Made by a program: the position numbers and the translations under genes
Shown here: one piece after another, positions 5,487 to 42,821 of the stretch
Layout of the letters: each line of letters starts with the position of its first letter
Numbering within the stretch: position 1 is the stretch's first letter
Notes under the pieces: model-generated
Databases searched by the model: none
What the model saw: the letters and a program-made list of their open reading frames with translations, nothing else
Told to the model about the DNA's origin: nothing
Assembly (NCBI GenBank): GCA_033442325.1
Contig: JAWQFM010000035.1
Span: 1 to 44,739 of the forward strand
Origin: Salpingoeca rosetta
Lineage: Eukaryota > Protista > Choanoflagellata
Direction of reading: 5' to 3'
DNA: 44,739 nt

Positions 5487-5586
5487 NNNNNNNNNNNNNN
5501 NNNNNNNNNNNNNNNNNNNNNNNNNNNNNNNNNNNNNNNNNNNNNNNNNNNNNNNNNNNNNNNNNNNNNNNNNNNNNNNNNNNNNN
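5487..5586. other. Assembly gap (100 N, probably a placeholder of unknown true size)
   Basis: Run of N separating ERCC6 intron sequence from 28S rDNA. Confidence 0.99.
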
Positions 5587-7211: not shown

Positions 7212-8161
7212 AACTAACCACATTGCAATAAAAGTCTCAGCTATCCTGAGGGAAACTTCGGTGGGAACCAGCTACTAGATGGTTCGATGAGTCTTTCGCC
7301 CCTATACCCAAGTTCGACGACAGATTTGCACGTCATGATCGCTACGAGCCTCCACCAGAGTTTCCTCTGGCTTCGCCCTACTCAGGCATAGTTCACCATC
7401 TATCGGGTCCTAAACATCTGCGCNNNNNNNNNNNNNNNNNNNNNNNNNNNNNNNNNNNNNNNNNNNNNNNNNNNNNNNNNNNNNNNNNNNNNNNNNNNNN
7501 NNNNNNNNNNNNNNNNNNNNNNNNNNNNNNNNNNNNNNNNNNNNNNNNNNNNNNNNNNNNNNNNNNNNNNNNNNNNNNNNNNNNNNNNNNNNNNNNNNNN
7601 NNNNNNNNNNNNNNNNNNNNNNNNNNNNNNNNNNNNNNNNNNNNNNNNNNNNNNNNNNNNNNNNNNNNNNNNNNNNNNNNNNNNNNNNNNNNNNNNNNNN
7701 NNNNNNNNNNNNNNNNNNNNNNNNNNNNNNNNNNNNNNNNNNNNNNNNNNNNNNNNNNNNNNNNNNNNNNNNNNNNNNNNNNNNNNNNNNNNNNNNNNNN
7801 NNNNNNNNNNNNNNNNNNNNNNNNNNNNNNNNNNNNNNNNNNNNNNNNNNNNNNNNNNNNNNNNNNNNNNNNNNNNNNNNNNNNNNNNNNNNNNNNNNNN
7901 NNNNNNNNNNNNNNNNNNNNNNNNNNNNNNNNNNNNNNNNNNNNNNNNNNNNNNNNNNNNNNNNNNNNNNNNNNNNNNNNNNNNNNNNNNNNNNNNNNNN
8001 NNNNNNNNNNNNNNNNNNNNNNNNNNNNNNNNNNNNNNNNNNNNNNNNGCACCACACCAAAAGCCCTGATCACAAGGCGCGCCCAGTCTCTGCTAGCTGC
8101 AAGCGATTCTCTGTCAACGGTTTCACGTACTGTTTAACTCTCTTTTCAAAGTGCTTTTCAT

Positions 8162-25695: not shown

Positions 25696-25799
25696 NNNNN
25701 NNNNNNNNNNNNNNNNNNNNNNNNNNNNNNNNNNNNNNNNNNNNNNNNNNNNNNNNNNNNNNNNNNNNNNNNNNNNNNNNNNNNNNNNNNNNNNNTATA

Positions 25800-25868
<69 letters not shown>

Positions 25869-26050
25869 ACACACACCAACACACACACACACACACACAC
25901 GCACAATGTAAAATCCATCCATACGCACCAGCACGTAGTGATCGACGACAATGACGGGGATGGCACCTGCAGTCATGATATATGAGGCATGAAAAGGGGT
26001 GGCAGGAGATGGAAGGTAGGTAAGAGCACGAACAGGACCGAAATTGTCTG

Positions 26051-26118
<68 letters not shown>

Positions 26119-26963
26119 GAAGGAGGGGTACCCAAATGCTTCCACGATGAGCCCAAACTTGGTCTCCAGCGCCAGCTCCGTGTACGTGTACTTGTTGAAC
26201 TCTTCCTCTGCCTGCTTACACGATGGGTCATATCCAACCTTCCCCCTCACGGCCCATTCGCTCTTCGCCAAACCACCGGCACGCGCACACCAACACAGTG
26301 TCCCTGCGCATACACAAGCAAACATACAAAGGGACGATGTGTGAGTGAGAGAGGTGGATCCAGACAGACACGCACACAATACCAAAACGGGTTGACTCCG
26401 AGGCAACGCACGACACACACACACGGAACACACAAGAACACAAAGCACATCACACACGTAGCACGACACACCTGCCGTTGTGAAGCTTGGGGGGGGGGGT
26501 GGTTGCGCATGGCATCAGAACGAGCAGACTCGATGGTGCTTCTGTACAACAGGGAAAGAAGACACACGTCAAGCAGCGACACCACAAGGGGTTTGGAGTG
26601 AGGTTGCAGCGGCTACAAGAAGGGCGAGTGGTGGTGCAGTGAGCGACACCAACCCCTCTAAATCCAGCAGCAGCAGTGAACATCGAACCTCACAGCGCAC
26701 CACGTCACACCACACACGCATGCATGCACAGACCTGAAGGTGACGAGGTACTTTCTGTTTGTGCAGGTGGAACGCGTCGTTGCTCCGGTGTGAAATGAAT
26801 GTCACAATGGAGAAGAGTGACATGGACACATCGAGGCCGTCACGGTGGTGGAATTCGCTCAGGCCAACCTGATGCAGGTGGTGATGCGAAACAAGGCGGC
26901 ATTGGTGAAGTGTAAGCAACAGCAGTCGTCGATGGTGAGCGCAGGCATGCACAGTCATGTTCC

Positions 26964-27006
<43 letters not shown>

Positions 27007-27850
27007 TGTACCTCTGCAAGAATGCCGTGTTCTGCATGCCAGGGGAGACTCGGTGCGTCCCTGTACTCAAACAGGATGTGGTAGCGGCCCTCGTTCCAAT
27101 ACGCAAGTCTGGCATGTATCAACACATGTGAGCATGTGAGCGTGTGTGTTTGGAAGACATGAACACAGGTCCTCTCACACGCACGACATCAAGATCCACA
27201 AGCACACCAGCACCACGAGCACCACAAGCAACAACAAACCACCACCTCAGCTGGAGAGATGGCGCTCGATGGCTGCGCTCACGGGATGCATCGACTCAAT
27301 GTTGCCAGAGTACGTGCTGTGCATGCAATCTTTCAGCCGCAAGCGCGCAAACACAATTATGAGGTGGTGGTGGGTGATAGTGACTGCTGTGGAAGCCCGT
27401 GCATCTGCACCGACGCGACACACACAATCACACACACACACACAATCACACACACACACACACACACACAATCAAACACACACCTTCACACCAGCACGAC
27501 ACGTCGGTGCCTGGGACGAAGAGGTAAGCCCTGGACGGGTCATCGGTGCTGTACGGCCGTCACGGATGGCGGTTCGGATGGCGCGGTAGATGGCTGGCAA
27601 GGGTAGCCTCTTCATCAGCACTCAGACGGTACACGTACACCTGCCATAGATGCACGCACGCATGAACATGTAATCATAACACACACGCAGACAAAGAGTG
27701 TGAGGTCATCATGCTTCGGTTGCACGCCATTCCACGCCGTTGCTGTTGCTGTTGCTGTGTTGGCAGGTCTTCACCTTGAACGATGGGCACGTGCGAAGAG
27801 GATCGATGGATATGTCGTGCGGTGATCCCTGACATCAGGACCGCCATTGG
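24985..27850 (-). pseudogene. Exostosin (EXT1/EXT2-like, GT47) glycosyltransferase, apparently pseudogenised
   Basis: Co-linear exon remnants: VYVYRL...YSTDDPSRAYLFVPG (~27500-27640), LAYWNEGRYHILFEY (~27015-27110), HRDGLDVSMSLFS...RKYLVTFR (26733-26870, two frameshifts), RSDAMRNH..KLHNG (poly-C frameshift), CKQAEEEFNKYTYTELALETKFGLIVEAFGYPSFR (26117-26280), GAIPVIVVDHYVL, LPRILRSIPDEVVEMMQRRVVFMFEEFFKS (25504-25615), ALESARINLF. Several acceptor sites look damaged. Confidence 0.8.
25696..25795. other. Assembly gap (100 N)
   Basis: N run between a (GT)n and a (CA)n tract inside the exostosin-like locus. Confidence 0.99.
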
Positions 27851-27997
27851 CAGTGCGATGGTGCAGCGGCATCTCGGGGCAGTGCGTTCTGGTAACAGTG
27901 GTGGTTGTGGTGGAGACGATGGGTGCGTTTGTTGTGTGGTGAGGCGCGCGAATGAAAGGGGATGAGAGAAGTGGTGGGAGATATCTGCAACGAACTG

Positions 27998-28049
<52 letters not shown>

Positions 28050-29713
28050 TGTGTGAAAGAGTTCATTCTCTTCTGCAGACATGAAGCTGTCGAGACGAAG
28101 CGGTGTAGAGAAGTGCACAGAAGGATTGCAAGACGATAGCGAGTGATGAGTGGTTCAGTGTGTGCAGGTACACATCAGCAGCAGCAGCAGCATCAGCAGC
28201 GCCGTCGGCGGCAATGCGCCCGCAACAACAACACAATTTGGTGGTTGCACCTCATGTCACCATCATCCTTGTGCCGGAGCAGCGCCTCCTTCCTCTCTTC
28301 AGCTGACGGCGTACCCTGTGGCCCAAACACACACGAGGAACAGAGCTTAGGACCACACATCGCAGCACAAGATCAAACGATGGCACACCAATAGCAGACA
28401 GCAGACGCATGGAAGAATGACCACGTCGACGACACATATGCACACACACATACACATACAGCGTGCGCATACTTTTGAAAGCATTCGCTCTGTCCCGCCA
28501 CGAGCAGCACCTTGCCAATGTTACCAACGCTCTGCTCCGTCGACGCAATCAAGGGCATCCAGTGGATGGCAACCTGGTCGTTAACGGTGGCGAGATGGGT
28601 GTTGCAGTGAGCGAGGGAACGTGCGCAGGAGTGATAAGCCGTCATCAAACGGTTGCCGAGCGTAACGAGAAACACACATGCACACACACACACACACATC
28701 GCTCACTGTCATGATGAGACGTGGGCATTCCATCATCATCCCGAGCATTCGCGCGTCACACATGTCCAGCGAGCGGGCTGTTGTGGGGTGTGCGTGTGAG
28801 GAAACCACGTGCGCATGGGGCGGGTGATGAGCACCTACAGCGTGCATGCCATGTAAACTGACTTGATTGCAAGCTGGAGGATGAATGATGTGTGACCACG
28901 ACAGAGGACTGACCGATGTCAGCGCAAATGCTGTGATTGCTCACCCCTGTACCGCTGTGGAGGTGCGTCCCACTCAAACGTGGCCTTCTGTATTGCTGGT
29001 GCCTTGGTCTCCGCCACTCTCACTTGCCGATTCCTGTCTGTTTGTTGTTTGCGTGGGAGGAAGAGACGATGCAACCGTGAGAACACACGTGCCAACAGCA
29101 GCAGCAAGGCAGCAGCAGTGGTTGTGGTTTGGATATCGGATCACCACCGTGCACTGATACACACACACACACACAACACACACAGAGCGGAGGTGTGATT
29201 GCACCCACCTCGCAGGTGGCCGTGAGTGACACTGCTAGCCGCTTGCCTTGTGGTGTGCGTATGTCAGCGGCACGTGTTGCCAGTGCACTCTGAGGGGCGT
29301 TGTTTCTGCAGGCCACTGCCTTGTCCAACCACAAGAGAACAGCACACATGTTCACGTTAGCCAAGCACAACAACGACGACCTGACGACGACGAAACCACC
29401 ACTTTCAGCAGGCGCGCAGCCCCCTGCACACATCCTTGTGCCACAAGAAGAAGGAAAGAAGGGAGTCCACACCCACACCCACAACGAAGCGGCAGCAGCA
29501 ACAACCGACAGCACTGCCACCACAAACAGGACACCGCGTCCCACGTTCACATACTTGGTTGCGTGACGCATGGAGCGAACGAATAGTGCCCAAGACGAAG
29601 AAGAAGAAGAAGCAGAAGTCGAGAAAGGAACAGCGGGCATGATGTGTGTTGGCTCACGTGGGGATCGTTGACGTGACACCTACTTTGTGTTGCATGTGTG
29701 TGTGTGTGTGTGT

Positions 29714-29788
<75 letters not shown>

Positions 29789-30111
29789 AGAGACCTTTCT
29801 TCCACATTGGTCTGGTTGGCTGTTGGTGACTGGGTAGCGATCACCAACAATCCCCTCTTCCCCTCTCCCACATCTCTCTTCCCACCCCATGCTGCTGTTG
29901 GGGTGACTGCTACATCACTCCTCCTTCCTTCCTTGCCTTGCCTCGCCTCGCTGTGTGCACTGCACCAAAGAGAACAAGAAGAAGAAGAAGATGAAGCGAG
30001 TGCAAGCAAGTTTGGGCTGCCACATCTCCACAGTCGTGCCATCGACTGATTTCAGCTTTCCCCGTCTTCTTCTGCACAGACACAACTCGTGGCTGGTTGC
30101 GCGCAATGCAC

Positions 30112-30147
<36 letters not shown>

Positions 30148-32189
30148 CATTCGCTGCGACGAAAGGAAAGGATGGATGGGGAGGTGCGTGGTGGTGGTTG
30201 GCGGTGGTGGTTTGGTCACATACTCAGCCACAACAGCCACAACAACAACAACAGCAGCAGCAGCAGGGAGCCGCAGGGGGGATATTGATGACAGATGACA
30301 ATGACACATGCAAGCAATCCATCAATCAATCAATCAAGCAGACGAGCAAGCAGGCAAGCGAGCAAGCAAGCCAAGCCAAGGGACATGTATTCATTCACTC
30401 CGCTTGGACGAGCGACACGCCCACCACGTGGTGCGTGCGTGTGTGTTGTACTCACTGCTCTGCTTCCTTTACACTGTTCCTTCCTGCCTCGCAGTCCACT
30501 CTCCCTTTCTTTCCTTTGCACACCCCTTGCTTGACCTGCTCTCTGCACACCATCTCTTCTCCACCCCCCCTTCACTCACACATCTCAAGCCACCTCCCTC
30601 TCACCTCCCCCTTTGCTTTTGGCTGCAACGCTGTGTGCCTTCATCTTCACCACCACCACCTGTTTTGCAGGCTGACGATGAGGATGATGATGGTGGCTTG
30701 AATGACAGCACCGTGTACTTGAGCGGGTGCCATCACCGTGTGCCACGACAACAAGAGGCACTTCCTTCTCTCTCGCTCTGTCTCGGTATGTGTGTGGCTG
30801 ATGGCGTGGGGGGTGGGGTGTTGCCTGGGATTTCCACTCCACTGCACTGCACCTCAATGTGCTGTGTGACGCGACATGCACACCACAGTTTGCACGCCTC
30901 CTTCCCCCACTTATCCCGTCAGCACGTCCTTGTTCTTGTCAACCACCTCCCCTCGTCAATCACACCCCACACCCCACACACATACTCTCTCCTTAACCCC
31001 TGTCACGATGTGTGCTTGCTTCAGAGCAGGCCTCTGACATTGTCATCACCGCTGCCATACGGCGGTCGGTGCCATGCACGGGCATGGAGACAGTGAGCCA
31101 GCTCGTGGTCTCCAGCGTGGTGGCTGGGATGTGCACTGAGGTGAAGGATCCCACCACCACACTTCCGCTTCCATACCACCATGACTGACACCACCAGCAG
31201 ACATCGCTCCCAGCGCCACACAAAACGTGTGTGTGTGTCTATGTGGGTATGTGTGTATGTGTGTGTGTGTGTGTGTGTGTATGTGTGTGATTGAATTCAT
31301 TTGCACTCGTTGCCCCTCCCGCATGTCGAAGCAACCACGCACACCGACCACCCCTCGTCAACACAACACCATTCAACATCCCCACTGGGCTGATGCAGGG
31401 CTGCACTTGCACGTCGTGCACGACAGCTTCTCATCGTCAGTTCTCTCTTCTCTCCTTTTTTGTCTTCACACAAGTCGCATCACCCCCGCCCAGTGGAGCG
31501 CCTGCATCTTGCTCCCCACCCTCCCGTTGCACGCGTGCACACACCGATTCCGGCCCAGCGCAGGCTCTGCTGCTGCAGCCAACCACCCACACACATCGTC
31601 ACCGCAACGCCGCTTCAACCAACCGCAGCCACCGACAGCCACGGGCATTGCACCTTTGCTGTGATTGAGTGCTGCCAGCACGTGGCCCCACCTCAACCTG
31701 CCACATCATCATCACCATCCCCGACACTGCCATGTGTGTGTGTGTGTGCATGCATGCGTATTCACGCCATCGTCAGCCACACCACGCCAACACAGCAACA
31801 GCTGCACTGCTTGCTGTCCTGCGCGGCGTTGTGGCGGTGCACTCAAGGCCCTTTTCTTTTGTCAACCAGTTTCCCGCTGCTGCTAGCTGTGCTTCTCCCT
31901 GACCATCTCAACTGCTGCTGTTTTCCGCCACCTCATCTCCTGCCAGCGAGGCATTCCACCGCGGCCACAGCCGTCACTGCACACTGCCGGTTTCAAGCAG
32001 CTCACTGCGGTGGATGCTGTTGGACCACCACACCGTTGTTGGAAGAGGGATTGGCCGTGATTGTGGCGGTTGTTGTGGTGCTGCACGCCATGACATCAAC
32101 AGCGGCAGTTGACGAGGTGATGGTGTGCTTGCGCTCCTCACTGGTTGCAGCGGCAGCAAGGGGGCGGCCATCGTGTTTCTGGTTCGCAT

Positions 32190-32745
32190 GCATGTGCTGG
32201 CCAACGTGGCGCAGGAGCGGTTCAAGGACTACGACAACGATTCTGTGCCGTTCATGAAGAACATTCTCCAACACTCAAACGACAGGCAATACCGCATGCT
32301 GCGCGGCCTGATGGGCGTGTTTGTTTGCAAGGACATGTTTGCGCCGGATGCACACGAGCTCATGCGCGTTATGCAAGCCAGCGCCGCCCAGATTGAGGAG
32401 GAGGATCCACAATCCACATACATCCACACAAGGTGCGCTCAAGGCCAAGAGAGAGAGGGGGGGTGTGCGCGTGTGAGTGTGTGAGTGTGTGTCTGTGTCT
32501 GTGTGTGTGTCTGTGTGTGAACATGTCGCTTCGTCGCTTCTCTCCTTTCTCCACTTTCGGCTTGCCAAACCTCACCGCCACCCCTTGTCGTCCTGCCGCG
32601 TTCAGGCTGTTGAGTCGCTGCTCGCTGTGATCCAGGGCTCCCGGCTCCCGCGAATCGCCCAACTCCAGCGCGACCGAGAACTGCATCTCCGCCTTTGTCA
32701 AGATTGCACACAACCCAGCACACGGCCTCTCAAAGGTGTGTGTGG

Positions 32746-32811
<66 letters not shown>

Positions 32812-33040
32812 TGCTACACTCCTTCTTCGCTGTCCTTTGCGTTGGTTGTTTGCTCTTGTTGTCACGTTGTCGTCGCTTTTTCTTTAACCTCCTCATCCAC
32901 CCATCCACCACCAACCCTTGCACAGATGAGATGCTGACACATCTGCTTGACTGGCTGTCTATTACAGAAGACGACGATGAAGCAAAGTACATCTTCACAT
33001 ACCTCGTCGAGGTCCTCCAAGCGTGAGTGCTACGACTGTG

Positions 33041-33108
<68 letters not shown>

Positions 33109-33656
33109 ATGGCCTGGTCGTGCTGCATGTGTCGGTGGTGTGCTCTGCCGCCTGTCGTTCTTGTTCGCGACTGACTCTCCCGTTCCCCCTCCCATTGCTT
33201 CCTGTACCTCCCTCTCCTTCCTTTTGTTGTTGCTTCTGTAGGCAAGATCCACGCGAGACTGCGCCTGAGAGCCCGGTGAAGATTGTGCGGGCGTTTGTTT
33301 GTGCAGGTGATTGGCACCCCCGCGGCCGCCGTCGACGAGCCCCACTGCCAGGGCATGTACACAGCCTCATGGTGCGTGGGTTGTGTTGTGTGTGATTTAT
33401 GTGATGTGTGTGTGTGTGTGTGTTTGCTGCCTCGAAGATGCGCGACTGTCGTGTACTTCGTGTACTTTCCCATCGTCTTCCTCCCTCTTCCTCCCTGCTC
33501 CTTCTTCCACTCCTCATTCTCACACCCTCGTGTCGTTTCCTCTCGTAGAATATGCAGGATTCGCCTGCCCACGGCGTGTTGAGGTATTTGATGCAGGACC
33601 CCGAGGTGCACACCCGCGTGCAGCGCGCTGTTGAGGCACTTGGCTCGTCCGCGTAG
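32190..33656 (+). pseudogene. Importin-5 (karyopherin beta-3/Kap121)-like fragment, probably a pseudogene
   Basis: VAQERFKDYDNDSVPFMKNILQHSNDRQYRMLRG-LMGVFVCKDMFAPDAHELMRVMQ...EEEDPQSTYI, then a jump to SATENCISAFVKI (frameshifted) and EMLTHLLDWLSITEDDDEAKYIFTYLVEVLQA, resembling IPO5 HEAT repeats. The KxxECIS segment and a large internal region are missing, and no N-terminal half is recognisable. Confidence 0.75.
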
Positions 33657-34922
33657 TCACCATGTTGTGATGTGGCGTGTCAACTTGTGCACCAGTTTAG
33701 AGCATGGCTGAATGTCTGTCGATTCCTCATCCTCTTGTTTCCCTTTCTTGCTCTCTTCTCTTCTCTTCTTCTTCTTCTCTTCTGTTCTTCCCTTCCTTCA
33801 CTCTCCCTCTCGCCTGCTTGCTTGCTTGCTTATGTCACGCCCTTCTTGTGCTTGCCTGTTGTTTCTATTGTGTGGCGCTGTGTACAGCTGAACACGTTCT
33901 TGGTGTGTTTGGTTGATGTGTGCTGCTGCTGCTGCTGTGCGTATTTGATTCTGGCTTGCAACTGGAGGGTGTTGTTTGATGTGCAGAGGGGCTGGCTGTT
34001 GTTTGGTTGGCTTGGCTTCATGTTGCATTTGGGCACTGCTGTGTGTGTGGATGTGTGGATGTGTGTGTGTTGATGTGTGTTGGGCTGGGGGCGTTGTTTG
34101 TGGGTTGTGTGGCGGACCTGTTCTTTCCTCAGTAAATGGCTCGATGAAGATGATGAGATCCGTTGACGGTGGTGATGGTGGAGCGGCGGTGATGTTTGTG
34201 GTGTTGATGTGGCTACAGACATTGGTGTGTTGTACCAACCAGGCAAAACCAAGCGAGGAGGGCGCGGCTGTTGTTCCTTTCGGCGACAAAGCGAGTCGGG
34301 TCGTTGCTGGCTGGCTGGCTGGAGGCACTTCATCCTGTTTGTTTGTTGTGTTCCCGGCAACAACGAGGGCTCGAAGAGATGGTTGACGAACATCTTCCAC
34401 GGAAGCGCTGGTGTGCGGATAACCTCTGTAAGGTTTTGCGAATCGTCCAATGGCTGAGTCGCAAAACAACAACACACACAAAACAAAGGAAACAAAAAGC
34501 AGCGCGTTGACTTGTCGTCGTCGGGATTATTGCAACTTTACCGCAGGCGCTCGCTAAATTCCCAATGTTTTTTGCTTCTACAGTTTCGGAATTTGCATGT
34601 GTCAAGGCAGCGCAAAGGCGGCGCAGCCGCCGGTTAGGGAAAACCCTGTGCGACAAATCTGGTTCGGGTAGCGCAGCGATGCGGGAGCGAGCGTAGCGGT
34701 TAGCGGGGGTAGGGCTTCACAGCATGCGATTTGATGGTTAGTGGACGCGCCTCGAGCTTTTGCGCGTGGTCACGAACCGGCAATGCTCACTTCGCAACCG
34801 TAGTTTAGCAATGGTCACCGGTAATATTTTTTAAAACCCTGTCGTCGTCCATTTGTCGTTGTCTTCTTCCAGCTCACGAGCACGTCACAACAAGCCACAA
34901 GGAGAAAAGACGACGCGCCGCC

Positions 34923-37900
34923 ATGTCCGGCGGAGAGAAGAGAGCGAGGGAGGAGGTGGAGGCGTTGCTGGCGCAGACGAAGCTGAAGGATGGGGTGAAG
35001 AACAAGATCAGGGCCATCGCCAACAACACGTGTGGGGACAATGTGGGGTGAGTGCAAAAGCAACCAAAACGACGTGTTGGAACATGCATGCATGTGTTGG
35101 ACAGAAGGACACTTCTTGTGGTTGTGCTTGTGCTTATTCTTCCCCCCCCCCTCTCTCTCTCTGCTTGGCTTGTCCTTGTGTTGCAATGAGCTTGGTGTGG
35201 CTTGCTGTTGGGTGTTCACGTGTGCGTGTCCTGTCCCCTCGCACCACCTGGACACATCAACAGAGAGTGTGTGTGCGTGTGTGTTTGTGGCAGGTTGTGA
35301 CTGGCACCCTCATGGTTTTGCTCTGTGTATCCTCAGTCTTCTTGCTCATTTCATGACACACACCATTTGAAATTACAGCTTGAATAATGCTCGCCTCGGC
35401 GTCATTGGGGCGCGTGCGGTGGCCGAGGCGCTCAAGGACAACACCTGCCTCAAACGACTCTAGTGCGTGGTGATGATGAATCTGCATCGTGTGACATGCA
35501 TGGTTGATTGGGGTGGCGGTGTTGCACGTTGCATCCCTTTCTCCTCCCCTGCTTGCGCATGTTTGGACGTGTGTTCACCGTCGCTCCCTGCGGTTCTTGT
35601 GTGTCTGCACAGCCTGCACAACAATTCCATCGGCCCTGAGGGCGCCGTGGCGTTGGCGGAGATGCTGAAGCACAACACGGCCCTCACATGGCTCAGGTGA
35701 GTGTGTGTACACGCACACATGCACATGTATGCTGCGTCACTGCCGCTGCACCTTATCACGTGCACATGTGTGGATTGATGACTGTGTTGCCACCCACAAC
35801 AATCATCACTCACGCACTCACTCTTCCTCATCCATGCGGCATCATTGCCCTGTGTGGCATCATCCAATTTTGACAGCCTGGGAGACAACTCCATCGGCGG
35901 CCAGGGCGCTGTGGTGTTGGCGGAGATGCTGAAGCACAACACGGCCCTCACATGGCTCAGGTGAGTGTGTACACGCACACATGCACATGTATGCTGCGTC
36001 ACTGCCGCTGCACCTTATCACGTGCACATGTGCCCATGTGTGGATTGATGACTGTGTTGCCACCCACAACAATCATCATCACGCACGCACGCACTCACTC
36101 TTCCTCACCCATGTGGCATCATCGCCCTGTGTGGCATCCACCATACCGTCTTGACAGCCTGTACAACAACTCCATCGGCGATGAGGGCGCCGTGGCGTTG
36201 GCGGAGATGCTGGAGCACAACACGACCCTCGAAACACTCGAGTGAGTGTGTACACGCACACATGCACATGTATGCTGCGCCACTGCCGTTGCACCTTATC
36301 ACGTGCACATGTGCCCATGTGTGGATTGATGACTGTGTTGCCACCCACAACAATCATCATCACGCACGCACGCACTCACTCTTCCTCACCCATGTGGCAT
36401 CATCCCCCTGTGTGGCATCCACCACATCATCTTGACAGCCTGTGGGACAATTCCATCGGCGATGAGGGCGCCGTGGCGTTGGCGGAGATGCTGAAGCACA
36501 ACACGACCCTCGAAAAACTCAAGTGAGTGTGTACACGCACACATGCACATGTATGCTGCGTCACTGCCGCTGCACCTTTATCACGTGCCCATGTGTGGAT
36601 TGATGACTGTGTTGCCATCCACAGCAATCATCATCACTCACTCACGCACTTCCTCACCCATGTGGCATCATCCCCCTGTGTGGCATCCACCACATCATCT
36701 TGACAGCCTGTGGGACAATTCCATCGGCGATGAGGGCGCCGTGGCGTTGGCGAAGGTGCTGAAGCACAACACGACCCTCGAAATACTCAAGTGAGTGGAA
36801 GCTCCTCTTTGCAATGTGTGTCTTTATGCGCTGCCTCTGCAGTACACATGTGCAGATCAAGGCACCGCAAGCCACCCACGATGTCTCTGCGACATGTTTG
36901 TCCAACTAACCAACAAATGCTTCCATCCTTCACCTGTGCCACAAGCGCTGCCACATCCTGTGCAATTTGCATTTGCCCCCTTTGCTTCCGCCATTGTGAC
37001 TTCAATGTCGTAGGACCTGATGTGCGAGCGAGTACGCGTGCACGTGATCCATCTGCAACCCACTTTCATCCATGACACTGACACGTGTTGCTTGCCCACC
37101 CGTTCCCCTGCTCTTCCAACATGTATTTCTTGCCACTTGCAGCTTGACCAAGAACTCCATCACCCCGGTTGGCGGTGCGGCGCTGGGTGCCGCACTGGAC
37201 CAGAACCGCACGCTGAAGAAGCTTAAGTCCGTCAATTGCGTTGCGCCTGCCTCATGAACGCCTGTGTCCTGTTGTGGATTTGTGTGACCAATCACCACTC
37301 TTTGAGTGCACGCCACACTGTGTGTTCCTCTCTGCTTGCTTGCATTTCTCCACAACCCTAACCACCAACCCTCCTGACCCACGCACCGCACTTGCTGCTT
37401 GTTCCCAACCACACGCTACCACCACGTGTCCTCGTTCAGCATCGAGAGGAACTCCACCGCCACTGCCCGCGCCTTTGGTGCCGCGCTGCCCGTCGACCGA
37501 GAACTCATCACAGGGGATTGGTCAATGCGTGCTTCCACTCTAGTCGCTTGATCCCTGCTTTCTCTCGACCCTTCTCCTCACGCACACATGCTGCGTGATG
37601 CTTGCGTCCAATGTCGCGTGGGATCACAGGTTTGGCGACGATGAGGGCAACGCCGCCTTCGACGAAGCACGCAAGGAGAAGAAACGACGACACCATGAGC
37701 AACTGTTTGCTGCCTGCAGGGATGGCGACGCTCCAGCTGTCACGTCCCTCATCGAGCAGGACAATGCAGACATCAACCAACAGGACAAGCAGGTATGTTC
37801 ATCATGTGTGTGTCTGGGTGTGTTTGTTGTGCCCGTATGTGACGGCGCTCGCTCATGGTTGCACCGGCCGTGTGTTCGTTTTCAATAGATCCTCACCACA

Positions 37901-38809
37901 CGTGCCATGCCCCTTGCTGCCCCCACCCAACAACAGGGCGACACGCCACTGCACGTTGCCTGCAGGCACAACCAGCCAGCCATTGTGAAGCTGCTCGTCG
38001 AGAAGGGCGCAGACACTTCCGTCAAGAATAAGAAGGTGTGCTTCGCGTCGTGTTGCTGTTTCTGAAGACGTGACACAACTGCTTCTTTGCTTTGCGCTGT
38101 GTTCTCCCCCTCTCCCTGCTTCCCTCCTTCCTCAACTCATGCGTTTTACCTTTCCAACACACGCAGGGAGAGAGGCCCTATGATGTGGCACAGGCCGGCC
38201 ACGCTGCCATCACCAGCATCCAAGGGCTGAAGCCAGGCGGCAAGCCTTCGGAGCAACCACAGCAGCAACAACCAAAACAAGAGCCACCTGCGCCCACTCC
38301 TGCCGCCGGACCGAAGCAAGAAGAACAAGCAGCGCAAGACGTGAGTGATCAGAAGGGTGCTTGCCAGCAACGCACAAGCAAATGCATCACGTCACCCATG
38401 CCATTCCTTCATCACGCTCTCCGTGGTCTCGTATCAAGCATAATCATGATGTCTCACACAACCGTCACCACCGCCACCAGCAGCAGCAGCCCGAGCAGGC
38501 GCGCAGGGAGCGTCTCCAGCAGCGCATGCGGGGGGTCATAGCACGCTTCAACGCGACCATGGCGGGCAGGGCCAAACTCATCTTCATTGGTCAGGGGCGC
38601 GCCGGCAAGACTTCCACGTTCCACTCACTCATGGGTCACATGTTCAACAAGCACGAGCACTCCACGCATGGCGCCGCCTCAACCGACCTCGCCGTCATTG
38701 TCGAATCAATGGACGTTCACGACTGGCAGGTGTGTGAGTGAAGCTGATGCGAGCATGTGATGTGTGCGACGATGGGTGTGAAGCGAGGTGGTGGTTGACA
38801 CGATCATCC

Positions 38810-38865
<56 letters not shown>

Positions 38866-39417
38866 CCTTTGCAGGAGCTGGATGCGGAAATCTCTGAGTT
38901 GATGCGCAGTCTCTGCGGCACAGCGCTGGCGCAGGAATCTGGCGTGGACTTGCAGATGAAGCAGGCGATGATGAAGGCGAAGGCCGACTTGGAGAGCCGC
39001 GTTGCCCAACACCAACAGCAACAGCGGCAACAAGAAGCCGAGAAGGCAGAGAAGGCGACGGGTTCAAAGTCGAAGAAGGAGCAGTTACAGAATTCAAAGG
39101 AGACGCGGTCACGGCCATCCTCCCGCACGTCGACATCGACGGTCCCAAAGCCCAGCAAGGCATCTCATGACTCAGCATCTGCGCCCACGAAGCAGGCCAC
39201 CCTAAACCCTTCCAGCCAAAGTGATGCTGCTGCGCGTGACAACAGCAGCAGCACCACGCCCGGCATGTCTGCTGAGGAAATGGAGAAAGCGATCAAGGAA
39301 TTCAACGTGGACGCCGTCATGGGCGAGGGCAAAGCGCGGGTCACGTTCAAGATCTTTGACCTGGGTGGCCAGTCCACCTTCTACATCTTCCACCCTTTCT
39401 TCCTCACAAAGTGGGTC

Positions 39418-39469
<52 letters not shown>

Positions 39470-42400
39470 TGTGTGTATGTGTGTGTGTGTGTGTGTGTGT
39501 GCCTGTGTGTGTGCGTTTGTCTGCTTGCAGTCCCTCCACCACCTCTCATTCATTCACCTCTCCCTTCATCACCCCACCCACCCAACAGGTACGCGGTGTA
39601 CCTGCTGGTGTTCTCGATGGAGGACCTGCTGCACCAAGACGAGAGCAAGCGGACAGAGGCGTGGGAATTTATGGAGCACTGGCTCTCCTCCCTCCACCTC
39701 CACGCCAAGGGCGCACCCGTCCTCATCGTCGGCACCTTCGCTGATGTGGTCAGCAAGCGGAAGCAACATGAGCAGATCTCACGTGACATTTACAGTCGCC
39801 TGCGCCACAATCCCGCCTTCCCTGGCGTCATCCACAACGACAAGCACGGCCTGTGGTTCTGGCCCGTTGACAACACCAAGTCCATCCACGACTCCATGAT
39901 CCAGGACCTGCGCCAAACCATCTCCTCCACAGCACTGGCGCAGGAATACGTGAGTCAGGAGGTCGCTGTGCCATACCTCCACCTCTACGACAAGCTCAAC
40001 GCCATTGCCCGCGACGAGGAGCGGCCGCTGCTCGCGTTTGACAAGGTGGTGGCGATTGCACGCACATGTGGGCTGCGTACACGTGAGGAGACGAGGGCGT
40101 GCCTCCAGTTCCTGCACCTGTACTCGATGGCGTTGTACTACGACCACGTGCCTGGCATGGAGGATTTCGTGATCCTGAGTCCACAGTGGGCTGTGGACAC
40201 GATGACGCGCGTTATCCGTAACTTTGACCTGCATCACGATGTGCGTGATGGCGAGGCGAGGGCCGTTGGCGCGCAGCTGTGGGACGACCTCGTTGACCGC
40301 GGCATCCTGCACCGTCACCTGCTCGACGTGTTGTGGAACGGCGTGGACAACAACTTGGTGATGCCGTTCCTGCACCTGATGATGCAATACGGGCTGTGCA
40401 TTGAGTATTCCCCACCCAAGCTGGTCGACAGCCGCACGGCACTTGCCCGCACCAACTCCGGCCACGGTGACAACGATGCGAGCGAGAGTGATGAACAACA
40501 ACAACAACACAAGCACCAGCAGTACCTGGTTCCAGCCATTCTGCCGATGACCATCTGCCACAGCAGCAGCACGATGGCATCCGTGTCGCTGAGCACGACA
40601 GCAGCGCAGCGAATCAACCCATATCTTGGGTACGAGGAGAAGACCGCATTTGTTGCCTTCAGCCTGAAGCAATTCAAGCGAAGTGCGAGCGTGCAAGTTG
40701 AAAATGCACAGCACGCATCGTTCCTGCCCGAGGGGCTGTTTACAATCGTGTTGGCTCATGTGCTGGCGCATGCACAGCACGGCGCATCGCAGGAACCCAA
40801 GCTGAGCCGCACCCATGCCATCTGCTTCATGGAGTCGACTAAGCTTGAACTGCAGCTTGTGCCGGCTGTTGGCGGCATCAAGATGAAGATCACGAGTGCG
40901 CAGCCACGCGCCATGCTGCACATGCTGCACACCATGATCAGCGAGGCCGCCAGAGAGCATTACCCAAGCCTGATGAGCAGCCTCCTGCTGCCATTTGACG
41001 ACAAGACGCTGCTGTTCTTTGAGGATGTGCTGCACCACCACAAGAGCAAGCAGGACATGTGGGTAGACGAACAGCTGCTGTCACCCGATGACCTGATCGC
41101 CAAGTATGGCCGTCTCTTGCCCGTTCTCGGCCTGCAGGACAAGTACGACGTCTTCATCAGCTACAGGTGAGTTGTGTGTGTGTATGAGTGTGTGTGTATG
41201 TGTATGGCGCGTGTATGTGTATGTGTGTGTGCCAGTATCTGTCTGTCACTTCCACCCACTAGCCACAACTACTGCATGTAGCTTCCCCTCATCTCATCAC
41301 TACCGACTCCAACCCCCCCCCCCTCCCGCAACCACACCCTCAGGCAACGCGCCAGCAGTGGGCTGGTGATGGCGCTGCATCCGCGCTTGGAGCAGCGCAA
41401 CCTGGTCGCGTTTCTGGACGCCAACAACCTGGAGACGGGCCTCAACTTCAAGCTGTCGTTCATGACGGCGATTGGGCTGAGCCTGGTGGCCTGCCCCATC
41501 GTCTCTGCTGCCACCATCATGCAGATGAGGCAGCTGCAGCACAGCGACTACTGCGACAACGTGCTGCTGGAGTGGATGACGATGCTGGCGCTGCGCGAGT
41601 ACCAACGGGCGCACGAGGAAGATGAGGAGCAGCAACACGCCAAGATCCGCCTTCGCCGCGTCGTGCCCGTGATTGTTGGCAGCGCGTGGCACAATGTGAA
41701 CGACAGCAGCATGAGCAAGGCTGAGGTGAGCGAGTACGACTCGTTTGACCGACTGAAGCGGCTGGCAATGAAGTTGCCGGATGCTGTGAGCAAAGAGACG
41801 GCAGCCGCGCTCGATCAGTACTTTTCACAGGTGCTGCGCCTGCCACCACCCCAGCAACACAAAACCGTGCGTGAGATTGTGCTGTCGCTCTTTGACATTG
41901 ACGCCGTGGTTGCATTGGACGCCGCTGTGGACCGCACGTCGCAGCTGCGCGACATCGCGGAGAAGGTGCGCCAGGTCGTCGCTTCTGCCAGGAGTGCAGA
42001 ACAAGCAACGCAGGGGCCAGCAACAACTGCACGTCGTTCCACGCAAGTGCAAGTATGTTTGAGTGTGAGTGTGGGTTTGTGGGTTTGAGTGTGAGTGTGA
42101 GTGTGAGTGTGGGTGCATGCATGCAGGCGAACTCTCTTCCTCTTCATCTTCCACTAGACGCTCACGCTGTGATTCACCCCCCTCACTCACATATCTTACA
42201 GTCCTCGTTGTCGCTCTCGTCCACCTCCGCGACAACTCCTGTTACACCACCACCTGCCACCCCATCTTCCTCCTCCCCCTCCTCATCGCCATTCGAGCCA
42301 GAGCTCATTCAATGGCTCAACCGCCACTCGCTGCTGTCGCACGTCGAGTCGGCGCTGATAGAGCACGGCATTGACTCGTTGGAAGTGCTGGTGGCTCTCG

Positions 42401-42516
42401 TACATGAGGGCGACTTGACAAAGCAGACGCTTCGGTCCTCCGGTGTGTCAATGGGTCCCGCCATGAAGCTGGTGCGAGAGGCAAAGAAGTACAAGGTGGA
42501 CGTAAGCTCAGCGTAG
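34923..42516 (+). CDS. Roco-family protein: RI/NLR-type LRRs, ankyrin repeats, Roc GTPase, COR, TIR, SAM (~1538 aa, 17 exons)
   Basis: Exons 34923-35047, 35379-35462, 35613-35696, 35877-35960, 36158-36241, 36439-36522, 36707-36790, 37143-37226, 37440-37520, 37630-37792, 37937-38035, 38167-38340, 38481-38729, 38875-39410, 39589-41166, 41344-42052, 42202-42516 are all GT-AG and sum to 4617 nt in one open frame. Motifs: LxxNSIGDEGAVALAEMLKHNTTL (LRR); GDTPLHVAC (ankyrin); KLIFIGQGRAGKT, STHG, FDLGGQ, VGTFAD, VDN (Roc G1-G5); LQFLHLYSMALYY...VILSPQW (COR); YDVFISYR...AFLD...DNVLLEW (TIR); LIQWL...LRSSGVSMGPAMKL (SAM). Confidence 0.92.
35613..36790 (+). repeat. Tandem array of five LRR exon+intron cassettes (periods 264, 281, 281, 268 bp)
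   Basis: The four introns are near-identical (GTGAGTGTGTACACGCACACATGCACATGTATGCTGCG...GTGGCATCC...CTTGACAG) and each exon is 84 nt. Confidence 0.95.
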
Positions 42517-42821
42517 CGCTTGGCCACTTGACCCATGGCATCTCCTTTCTCTTCCTTTCACCACCGTCCATTTTGTGGCTTCTGTTCTCTCCTCCAGTCC
42601 TGTCATTGTGGTGCTGTTGTTACATTGCGCTCATTACCCACTGTTCTGTTCACACGCACGCCAGTTGTGGTTTCCTCGTTGCTGCTCCCTTGTTTTCGCT
42701 CCCCCCTTGTTGCTGTTGTTGTGTATGACGCATGTGTGCATAGGTCTACCCTTTGTGGTATGACTCTGCTTGGTTTCATGATACACGCGTATGCAGCCGG
42801 TGGAACGGTTTCGCGAAACAT

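What the first reader, a model, noticed from the sequence alone, without database searches (positions are those of the whole stretch)
34923..42516. LRR-ANK-Roc-COR-TIR-SAM protein: candidate intracellular immune receptor
Seen: an intact gene joining a variable RI/NLR-type LRR sensor, ankyrin repeats, a Roc-COR GTPase switch, a TIR domain and a SAM domain, with no kinase. Known: Roc-COR dimerises in a nucleotide-dependent way, SAM oligomerisation activates the SARM1 TIR NADase, and bacterial LRR-Roc-COR-TIR proteins exist. Inference: an NLR-analogous sensor-switch-effector using a GTPase instead of a STAND ATPase.
Basis: partly seen in the sequence, partly recalled or inferred. Interest (0 to 1): 0.75.

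Follow-up and report, generated by a model that had tools for sequence, protein, structure and literature searches.

The report
Choanoflagellate LRR-Roco GTPase with TIR-SAM tail
This is a real, transcribed gene of the choanoflagellate Salpingoeca rosetta, one of about 40 fast-diversifying copies near chromosome ends, that joins a leucine-rich-repeat sensor and a Roco GTPase switch to a TIR enzyme and a SAM domain, so it is built like an immune receptor, but no immune role has been tested.

Summary
Window 34923-42516 (+) holds an intact 17-exon, all GT-AG gene of 1,537 codons. RNA reads show it is transcribed and spliced.

Domain order: 8 RI-type LRRs (one 84-nt or 81-nt phase-2 exon each), 2-3 ankyrin repeats, Roc, COR, TIR, SAM. 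There is no kinase.

- **TIR and SAM:** both fall just under Pfam's cut-offs, but profile and fold searches confirm them.
- **TIR activity:** the TIR keeps the catalytic Glu. A 2026 preprint showed that a paralogue's isolated TIR makes cADPR.
- **Organism:** Salpingoeca rosetta.
- **Family size:** the gene is one of at least 39 paralogues, and relatives occur in other choanoflagellates.
- **Constraint:** the core exons are under purifying selection.
- **Diversification:** LRR exons are recently duplicated and vary at the ligand-face positions.
- **Variable tails:** SAM, PNP_UDP or PARP-like.
- **Location:** the gene lies in a repeat block shared by many contig ends.

An NLR-like sensor-switch-effector role is the best reading, but it is untested. 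The scan had already found this family on other pieces of this genome. The kind (Roco plus TIR) is in print; the family-level features are not, as far as I could find.

The parts
34923..35047 (+). Exon 1: start codon and a hydrophilic N-terminal cap (41 aa), with no signal peptide
   Evidence: ATG in frame, GT donor at 35048. 57% identical to PTSG_03500 residues 159-193. Hydropathy maximum -0.09. The start is not confirmed by RNA.
35379..37520 (+). LRR sensor: 8 RI-type repeats, each on its own phase-2 exon. Exons are 35379-35462, 35613-35696, 35877-35960, 36158-36241, 36439-36522, 36707-36790 and 37143-37226 (84 nt each) and 37440-37520 (81 nt)
   Evidence: All exons are AG/GT flanked and symmetric in phase 2. 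LRR_6 hits. A 281-bp exon-plus-intron tandem array spans 35609-36797, 4.3 copies at 90% identity. The variable positions are the x positions of LxxLxLxxN.
37630..38340 (+). Ankyrin repeats (exons 37630-37792, 37937-38035, 38167-38340) followed by a Q/P-rich linker
   Evidence: Pfam Ank 2.8e-10 on exon 11 and 0.02 on exon 10. RNA junctions 37792|37937 and 38035|38167.
38484..38729 (+). Roc N-terminal part with the P-loop GQGRAGKT. The acceptor alternates between 38481 and 38484 (NAGNAG)
   Evidence: Pfam Roc 1.4e-6, 28.9 bits. RNA junctions 38340|38484 (8 reads plus contigs) and 38340|38481 (9 reads).
38875..39410 (+). About 150 aa of coiled-coil/low-complexity insert inside Roc, then the switch II motif DLGGQ
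   Evidence: Read from the sequence. Roc profile positions 39-77. RNA depth is continuous, and the loose end at 38730 reads into 38875. The insert is shared by paralogues and by the S. infusionum relative.
39589..41166 (+). Roc C-terminal half (GTFAD at the G4 position), COR-A, COR-B, and TIR strand betaA (YDVFISYR)
   Evidence: COR-A 2.4e-16; COR-B weak, E 0.21. At least 39 paralogous exons. dN/dS 0.13-0.27.
41344..42052 (+). TIR domain (betaB onward) with a helical extension. The catalytic Glu codon GAG lies at 41570-41572 (Glu1273 of the model)
   Evidence: TIR_2 E 0.025 on the exon alone. Profile hits to TIR structures. Fold of the intact paralogue. Glu conserved in 52 of 53 sequences. It is the same Glu as the assayed E1118 of F2UB80. 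dN/dS 0.10-0.42.
42202..42516 (+). S/T/P-rich linker, then the SAM domain (about 42295-42500) and the TAG stop
   Evidence: SAM_2 E 0.0015. Model pLDDT above 90 for residues 31-95. Top 21 structural matches are SAM domains. RNA contigs start at 42202.
26000..34522 (.). Upstream repeat block shared with other contig ends and with paralogue loci; this is the setting of the gene, not part of its coding sequence
   Evidence: 32900-34522 recurs at 86-91% identity upstream of at least 13 paralogues. 26000-32900 recurs at 86-89% at more than 10 contig ends. A 1-kb element (26000-27005) recurs at about 25 more ends, on + at low and on - at high coordinates.

Best explanation
The gene encodes a cytosolic multidomain Roco-family GTPase of Salpingoeca rosetta. 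It belongs to a family of about 40 members that lies largely near chromosome ends.

Proposed mechanism:
1. The concave face of the RI-type LRR array, perhaps with the ankyrin repeats, binds a ligand or guards a host target.
2. This changes the nucleotide state or dimer arrangement of the Roc-COR module.
3. That change, helped by SAM-SAM association, brings TIR domains together.
4. The assembled TIR active site converts NAD+ to cADPR, acting as a signal or a NAD+ drain.

This is the logic of an NLR receptor, with a Roco GTPase in place of a STAND ATPase.

Shown here: the architecture; transcription and splicing; the TIR and SAM folds; the conserved catalytic Glu; family size; purifying selection on the core; LRR exon duplication; and the variable C-terminal modules.

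Published for a paralogue: cADPR synthesis by the isolated TIR.

Inferred only: ligand sensing, GTPase control of the TIR, the role of SAM, and the immune function.
For: - Architecture and intact model.
- RNA evidence: + strand transcription, GT-AG junctions, and exact-match contigs in the most divergent exons.
- TIR: the profile search matches TIR structures almost exclusively (Roq1 E 1.2e-4). The model has pLDDT 91.5 and its top 50 Foldseek hits are all TIR, including RUN1 at 7.8e-6 and SARM1.
- Catalytic Glu in DNVLLEW is conserved in 52 of 53 sequences, including the window's.
- Preprint 10.64898/2026.04.20.719644, Table S4 entry 33: the TIR of S. rosetta F2UB80 (residues 1034-1255, catalytic Glu1118, the same Glu) makes cADPR in E. 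coli.
- SAM fold on the window's own exon: p73 SAM Z 8.5 at 1.8 A; SARM1 SAM Z 7.0.
- Family: at least 39 Roc-COR loci, about 35 with a TIR exon downstream and about 25 with a SAM exon.
- Core under purifying selection: omega 0.1-0.4.
- LRR diversification: a 281-bp exon-plus-intron tandem array at 90% identity. pN reaches 0.22 against intron divergence of 0.03-0.09, and changes concentrate at the beta-strand x positions. A paralogue has different LRR exon content and number.
- Effector swaps: PNP_UDP_1 in PTSG_02681; a weak PARP hit in PTSG_11903; SAM directly after COR at two loci.
- Setting: a repeat block shared by contig ends. The genome paper describes shared subtelomeric repeats.
- The same architecture occurs in S. 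infusionum and Hartaetosiga balthica.
Against: - No challenge, knockout or binding data exist for any full-length member.
- The assayed TIR is a paralogue, tested alone in E. coli.
- The LRR selection signal rests on five 27-codon exons and is only suggestive. In 3 of 10 pairs pS exceeds pN.
- The window's TIR junction (41166|41344) and its start codon are not shown by RNA.
- COR-B is weak in the window (E 0.21).
- The gene is expressed in ordinary cultures, so it need not be inducible.
- Enrichment near contig ends is only partly verified, because I know few contig lengths.
- Rapid diversification fits allorecognition or bacterial-cue sensing as well as immunity.
Confidence: 0.55

Rival explanations
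1. The family serves self/non-self recognition between choanoflagellate cells (mating, colony or kin discrimination, or an incompatibility-type cell death) rather than defence against microbes. This would resemble fungal HET/NLR-like genes. The same sensor-switch-TIR logic would apply, with a conspecific ligand.
For: A large, fast-diversifying family near contig ends with swapped effector modules, including PNP_UDP_1. To my knowledge, not tested here, PNP_UDP_1 is a common effector module of fungal NLR-like proteins. S. rosetta has sexual and colonial stages (Fairclough 2013, read for other points).
Against: Nothing links the family to mating or colony formation. Relatives occur in several choanoflagellates with different life styles. 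It cannot be told apart from the immune reading with the present data.
Confidence: 0.15
2. It is an ordinary signalling protein that senses environmental or bacterial cues (prey, or rosette- or mating-inducing factors) and makes cADPR as a calcium-mobilising second messenger. On this reading the many copies reflect subtelomeric duplication rather than an arms race.
For: The paralogue TIR makes canonical cADPR, and in most TIRs tested NAD+ was not depleted. The gene is expressed in standard cultures. The core domains are under purifying selection.
Against: Non-synonymous change concentrated on the LRR ligand face, LRR exon copy-number differences and swapped effector modules are not expected of housekeeping signalling.
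Confidence: 0.2
3. The copies are passengers of a mobile or selfish repeat and are largely non-functional or decaying.
For: Dispersed copies at 67-90% identity are embedded in a repeat block of at least 17 kb shared by many loci. Some copies are broken: there are stops in the TIR at C30:59296 and C5:856672, and fragments at C12, C9 and C18.
Against: dN/dS is 0.1-0.4 with dS 0.28-1.0 across Roc-COR, TIR and SAM. This copy is intact, transcribed and spliced. No transposase, reverse transcriptase or integrase domain was found in the window's long ORFs. Orthologous architectures exist in other choanoflagellates.
Confidence: 0.05

Closest known systems
S. rosetta F2UB80 (UniRef cluster F2UPN6), the protein whose TIR was assayed in bioRxiv 10.64898/2026.04.20.719644
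   Same: Same gene family. The assayed fragment starts at the same YD-x-FISYR strand and carries the same CDNVLLEW block. Its annotated catalytic Glu1118 corresponds to Glu1273 here. The legend of the figure that shows the full-length architectures lists LRR, Roc and COR.
   Different: It is a different paralogue (1,352 aa against 1,537 aa). By eye its TIR is closest to PTSG_03500, which is 61% identical to the window's TIR exon. Only the isolated TIR was studied. The preprint says nothing about family size, the LRR exons, SAM or genomic location.
Brown-algal LRR-ROCO candidate immune receptors (Zambounis 2012; Teng 2024, PMC11378527)
   Same: LRR-Roc-COR order. Each LRR sits on its own phase-2 exon, with exon duplication and shuffling. 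Expanded family (37 genes in Ectocarpus).
   Different: Brown-algal exons are 72 bp and encode a 23-24-aa LRR type; here they are 84 bp and RI-type, 28 aa. Brown-algal proteins stop after COR; this one adds ANK, TIR and SAM. The lineages are unrelated, so the exon-per-repeat design is probably convergent.
SARM1 / TIR-1
   Same: SAM and an enzymatic TIR with a catalytic Glu in one protein. Both the SARM1 TIR and SAM domains are structural matches.
   Different: SARM1 is ARM-SAM-SAM-TIR with no GTPase and no LRR. Here TIR precedes a single SAM. Plant TNL TIRs are better fold matches than SARM1. It is not an orthologue.
NLR / STAND immune receptors (plant TNLs, animal NLRs)
   Same: A tripartite sensor (LRR), nucleotide switch and effector (TIR) arrangement; large variable families; the best TIR fold matches are plant TNL TIRs.
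   Different: No NACHT or NB-ARC ATPase appeared in any exon scan; the switch is a Ras-like Roc GTPase with COR. The domain order is also reversed: LRR at the N-terminus and TIR at the C-terminus.
LRRK1/2, and Trichoplax and Chondrus ROCO proteins
   Same: ANK-LRR-Roc-COR core as in LRRK2. ROCO proteins with TIR have been noted in Trichoplax (Civiero 2014, Fig. 1 legend) and Chondrus (TPR-ROCO-TIR).
   Different: No kinase or WD40 domain, and LRR precedes ANK here. UniRef's automatic name 'non-specific serine/threonine protein kinase' for the paralogues is not supported by any domain hit.

Membership tests
ROCO (Roc-COR) GTPases | Ras-like Roc domain with an intact P-loop and a DxxG motif | tested here: met
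   Pfam Roc 28.9 bits (cut-off 27) on exon 13. GQGRAGKT and DLGGQ were read from the sequence. Intact paralogues score 45-68 bits.
ROCO (Roc-COR) GTPases | COR domain directly C-terminal to Roc | tested here: met
   COR-A 60.4 bits (cut-off 35.3), immediately after Roc in exon 15. COR-B is only weak: E 0.21 here, and 2.5e-4 to 1.7e-3 in relatives, all below the cut-off.
ROCO (Roc-COR) GTPases | GTP binding and hydrolysis; nucleotide-dependent dimerisation | not testable with these tools
   Needs purified protein.
TIR domain (enzymatic class) | TIR (flavodoxin-like) fold | tested here: met
   Model of PTSG_03500 residues 1185-1430, which is 61% identical to the window's exon (a member of the alignment): pLDDT 91.5, and the top 50 Foldseek hits are all TIR. 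The window's own domain could not be modelled whole because an intron splits it.
TIR domain (enzymatic class) | Pfam TIR/TIR_2 score above the curated cut-off | tested here: not met
   15.5 bits on the window's exon; 25.8-27.8 bits in intact relatives, against a 28-bit cut-off. A family profile nevertheless matches TIR structures almost exclusively in the PDB.
TIR domain (enzymatic class) | Catalytic glutamate | tested here: met
   Glu of DNVLLEW, GAG at 41570-41572, conserved in 52 of 53 sequences. It is the same residue as E1118 in the preprint's Table S4.
TIR domain (enzymatic class) | NAD+ cleavage or cADPR synthesis | not testable with these tools
   Published for the paralogue F2UB80 only.
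SAM domain | Five-helix SAM fold | tested here: met
   The window's exon 17 modelled directly: five helices, pLDDT above 90. The top 21 chains of an exhaustive alignment are SAM domains, with Z 8.5-6.3 at 1.8-2.8 A for most. Foldseek alone was not significant.
SAM domain | Pfam SAM_1/SAM_2 score above the cut-off | tested here: not met
   SAM_2 scores 19.1 bits against 20.5 in the window. The Hartaetosiga relative P0068 reaches 21.0 bits.
NLR / STAND | NACHT or NB-ARC STAND ATPase | tested here: not met
   No such hit in any exon or paralogue scan. It is an analogue, not a member.
LRRK kinases | Protein kinase domain after COR | tested here: not met
   No Pkinase hit; TIR follows COR directly.
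SARM1 orthologues | ARM - tandem SAM - TIR order | tested here: not met
   There is no ARM domain, only one SAM, and the SAM follows the TIR.

The most novel reading that the evidence does not exclude
Choanoflagellates, the sister group of animals, keep a repertoire of about 40 GTPase-switched, NLR-analogous intracellular receptors in their subtelomeres. The repertoire diversifies by duplicating single-LRR exons, by exchange between paralogues and by swapping effector modules (TIR-SAM, PNP_UDP, PARP-like), and it signals through TIR-made cADPR. That would be an independent, Roco-based solution to innate immune recognition at the root of animals.
Probability: 0.4. Interest if true: 0.8.

Novelty: new member of a known kind. 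Interest (0 to 1): 0.55.

Why it matters
Richter et al. 2018 did not detect the animal NLR family in choanoflagellates, and their Pfam-based survey listed no Roc/COR partner for TIR. That fits this family's TIR scoring just under Pfam's cut-off.

If the family does sense non-self, it shows that the closest relatives of animals built a large intracellular receptor repertoire on a Roco GTPase. It would link a LRRK2-type switch to TIR/cADPR signalling, and it would be a second, independent case after brown algae of receptor diversification with one exon per LRR.

S. rosetta is genetically tractable, so the idea can be tested. If the family is not immune, it is still a well-defined system for asking how Roc-COR controls an output domain.

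Tried and rejected
- **Intronless copy on C32.** A 3,129-aa open frame around the C32 paralogue looked like an intronless copy but was an N-run artefact.
- **Single-sequence PDB searches.** The TIR exon gave nothing and the SAM exon gave only chance hits. The SAM profile also found nothing in the PDB. Foldseek was not significant for SAM; the exhaustive aligner settled it.
- **Transposon rival.** No mobile-element domains were found in the window's long ORFs.
- **Telomere repeats.** None at the window's start, although arrays exist at other contig ends.
- **Literature by locus tag.** Searches by locus tag or UniProt id found nothing.
- **Origin of relatives.** The environmental Roc-COR-TIR relatives are of undetermined origin. 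One is split like an intron-bearing gene.
- **Joined protein.** Exons were searched singly by reference, and intact database paralogues stood in for the junction.
Full report
**What is there**

The region is broken into many short open frames, which is typical of a spliced eukaryotic gene. Reading the + strand gave a 17-exon model from the ATG at 34923 to the TAG at 42514-42516. Every intron is GT-AG and no exon holds a stop. The model is 4,614 nt, or 1,537 aa.

I laid a 5,401-base stretch (37300-42700) against four runs. In the stranded RNA run X21 nearly all first mates lie on the - strand, so the RNA is + strand. The reads and contigs show these junctions:
- 37792|37937
- 38035|38167
- 38340|38484, with a NAGNAG alternative at 38481
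- a loose end that reads from 38729 into 38875
- contigs that begin at 42202

These results corrected two of my first guesses. Contigs match without a single difference across exons 12-14. Those exons are only 40-60% identical between paralogues, so this copy itself is expressed. Junctions 39410|39589 and 41166|41344 lie next to (TG)n runs that the tool masked.

**Domains**

Exon-by-exon Pfam scans give:

| Domain | Result |
|---|---|
| LRR_6 | E about 4e-4 on single 27-aa exons |
| Ank | 2.8e-10 |
| Roc | 28.9 bits, above the cut-off |
| COR-A | 60.4 bits |
| COR-B | weak |
| TIR_2 | E 0.025 |
| SAM_2 | E 0.0015 |
| Kinase, NACHT, NB-ARC | none in any exon |

The Roc motifs GQGRAGKT and DLGGQ are intact. 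A low-complexity/coiled-coil insert of about 150 aa lies between them. It is exonic (RNA depth is continuous) and is shared by paralogues and by a Salpingoeca infusionum relative.

The TIR is split by an intron right after strand betaA (YDVFISYR | QRASSGLV...), which explains the poor score on the exon alone. Database paralogues with the junction intact hit TIR_2 from profile position 1, at 25.8-27.7 bits. That is just under the 28-bit cut-off.

**TIR and SAM tested independently**

I aligned 53 family TIR regions, with PTSG_03500 as first row and the window's exon as a member (A1).
- Its profile matched TIR domains almost exclusively among 177,635 PDB sequences: 15 of 16 hits, the exception being a pyocin at E 0.22. 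Examples are Roq1 (1.2e-4), AT1G72930, L6, TcpB and SARM1.
- The AlphaFold model of PTSG_03500 residues 1185-1430 has pLDDT 91.5 and pTM 0.89.
- All of its top 50 Foldseek matches are TIR domains, led by the plant TNL TIRs RUN1, SNC1 and L6, followed by SARM1 and SPARTA.
- The glutamate of the block DNVLLEW is conserved in 52 of 53 sequences, including the window's (GAG at 41570-41572).

For SAM I modelled the window's own last exon with 13 paralogue sequences.
- It forms five helices with pLDDT above 90 over residues 31-95.
- Foldseek was not significant.
- An exhaustive alignment against 48,161 chains put SAM domains in the top 21 places: p73 SAM at Z 8.5 and 1.8 A over 61 of 61 residues, and SARM1 SAM at Z 7.0.

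**Organism and family**

The exhaustive protein search returned S. rosetta proteins PTSG_11903, PTSG_02681, PTSG_03500 and PTSG_09165 as the nearest representatives, at 86-53% identity. All are annotated as hypothetical or carry automatic names. The next-nearest hits are from other choanoflagellate transcriptomes:
- S. infusionum: LRR-Roc-COR-TIR, 32% identity
- Hartaetosiga balthica: COR-TIR-SAM, with SAM_2 above the cut-off
- Didymoeca
- Mylnosiga

In the window's own 55.4-Mb genome the Roc-COR exon has at least 39 loci, more than 30 of them full length at 67-90% identity.
- About 35 have a TIR exon 100-250 bp downstream.
- About 25 also have a SAM exon.
- At C13:1246686 and C33:477111, SAM follows COR directly.
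- TIR copies at C30:59296 and C5:856672 carry stop codons.
- PTSG_02681 has no recognisable TIR but carries a PNP_UDP_1 domain (28.6 bits, cut-off 25.1).
- PTSG_11903 has a weak PARP-like tail (E 0.023).

About 55 of the 152 Roc-COR relatives I held carry this TIR after COR, so the fusion is widespread.

**Selection and diversification**

Between the window and 15 paralogues, dN/dS is 0.13-0.27 for Roc-COR, 0.10-0.42 for TIR and 0.25-0.82 for SAM, with dS between 0.15 and 1.0. These are maintained genes. The nearest paralogue changes from exon to exon: for example L007 is 87% identical in Roc-COR, 93% in TIR and 65% in SAM. That suggests exchange between copies.

In the LRR region, four to five exon-plus-intron units form a 281-bp tandem array at 90% identity. 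Among the five young exons:
- non-synonymous differences (pN 0.05-0.22) exceed synonymous ones in 7 of 10 pairs;
- in most pairs they also exceed intron divergence (0.03-0.09);
- the most variable positions (2, 26 and the boundary codon) are the x positions of LxxLxLxxN, which by established LRR structure line the concave binding face.

The C36 paralogue has other residues at those positions and an extra identical copy of one LRR exon. The sample is small, so I call this suggestive only.

**Genomic setting**

The window is the first 44.7 kb of contig C35.
- The 1.6 kb at 32900-34522 recurs at 86-91% identity upstream of at least 13 paralogues.
- The stretch 26000-32900 recurs at 86-89% identity at more than 10 contig ends.
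- A 1-kb element (26000-27005) recurs at about 25 further ends, on the + strand at low coordinates and the - strand at high coordinates.
- TTAGGG arrays exist at some contig ends. On C5 the array is at 4.2-4.5 kb and the element at 19.2 kb.

The genome paper reports that most telomeric supercontigs share repeated subtelomeric regions. No transposon-type domain was found in the window's long ORFs. I conclude that the gene sits in a subtelomere-type repeat block. Enrichment of the whole family near ends is only partly verified, because I know few contig lengths.

**Literature**

- A 2026 preprint (10.64898/2026.04.20.719644) screened isolated TIR domains in E. coli. Its Table S4 entry 33 is S. 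rosetta F2UB80 (1,352 aa), residues 1034-1255, with catalytic Glu1118. The fragment starts at the family's YD-x-FISYR strand and holds CDNVLLEW, so it is a paralogue. It is marked active, the text lists S. rosetta among the cADPR producers, and the Figure 3 legend lists LRR, Roc and COR.
- Brown-algal LRR-ROCO genes have one 72-bp phase-2 exon per LRR, show exon shuffling, and are proposed immune receptors. The same paper notes TPR-ROCO-TIR in Chondrus.
- Trichoplax ROCO proteins with TIR or CARD are drawn in Civiero 2014.
- Richter 2018 lists Ank, Arm and SH2 with intracellular TIRs of choanoflagellates, but not Roc/COR.
- I found no paper on this family's size, LRR exons, SAM tail or location.

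**Earlier notes of this scan**

Earlier notes describe the same family on other pieces of this genome. One gave me the lead to the preprint, which I checked myself.

**Verdict**

The architecture-based reading (sensor, GTPase switch, TIR-SAM effector) is the best-supported one, and an assay on a paralogue's TIR strengthens it. The immune role and the coupling between domains are untested. Roco-plus-TIR proteins are a known kind and a sister copy is already in print, so I file this as a new member of a known kind, with family-level features that look undescribed.

Noticed in passing
window 26000-34522; G000 contig ends listed: A repeat block of at least 8.5 kb upstream of the gene recurs at 86-91% identity at more than 10 contig ends. 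Its first 1 kb (26000-27005) recurs at about 25 more ends, on the + strand at low and the - strand at high coordinates, as subtelomeric repeats would.
   Followed up: partly
window 32372-33679 (-) and 33801-34526 (-): Long antisense open frames (436 and 242 codons) of low complexity lie inside the shared upstream block. They have no Pfam domain, and the + strand is very T-rich here (AT skew -0.55). They could be a co-duplicated gene, a promoter region or chance.
   Followed up: partly
window 38481/38484: NAGNAG alternative acceptor in a CAG run: 9 RNA reads use 38481 and 8 use 38484, which adds or drops one Gln before the Roc domain.
   Followed up: no
window 40522 -> 38466: RNA joint that 'goes back' 2,057 bases, seen in one contig of X1 and 9 reads of X21. 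Both ends lie in Gln-codon (CAG/CAA) runs, so a repeat-driven mis-join or a paralogue chimera is likelier than a back-splice.
   Followed up: no
P0002 (PTSG_02681) residues 1270-1492; P0001 (PTSG_11903) residues about 1400-1490: Two paralogues have other C-terminal modules. One has a PNP_UDP_1 phosphorylase-family domain above the cut-off, with only a degenerate, TIR-like remnant after COR. The other has a weak PARP-like region (FHG ... GIYFT) after an intact TIR.
   Followed up: partly
G000 C13:1246686-1246943 and C33:477111-477347; C30:59296-59685; C5:856672-857325: In two paralogues the SAM exon follows COR directly with no TIR. Two TIR exons carry stop codons and are probably pseudogenes.
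   Followed up: no
window 38875-39300: A coiled-coil/low-complexity insert of about 150 aa lies inside the Roc GTPase between the P-loop/switch I part and DLGGQ. It is transcribed and shared across the family, including S. infusionum.
   Followed up: partly
UniRef names of P0001, P0004, P0006: The automatic name 'non-specific serine/threonine protein kinase' is attached to family members that have no kinase domain. It was probably carried over from LRRK.
   Followed up: yes
window 5487-5586, 7424-8048, 25696-25795; G000 C32 about 763000-770800: N-runs (assembly gaps or withheld stretches). The one on C32 produces a false 3,129-aa open frame in the own-genome search table.
   Followed up: yes
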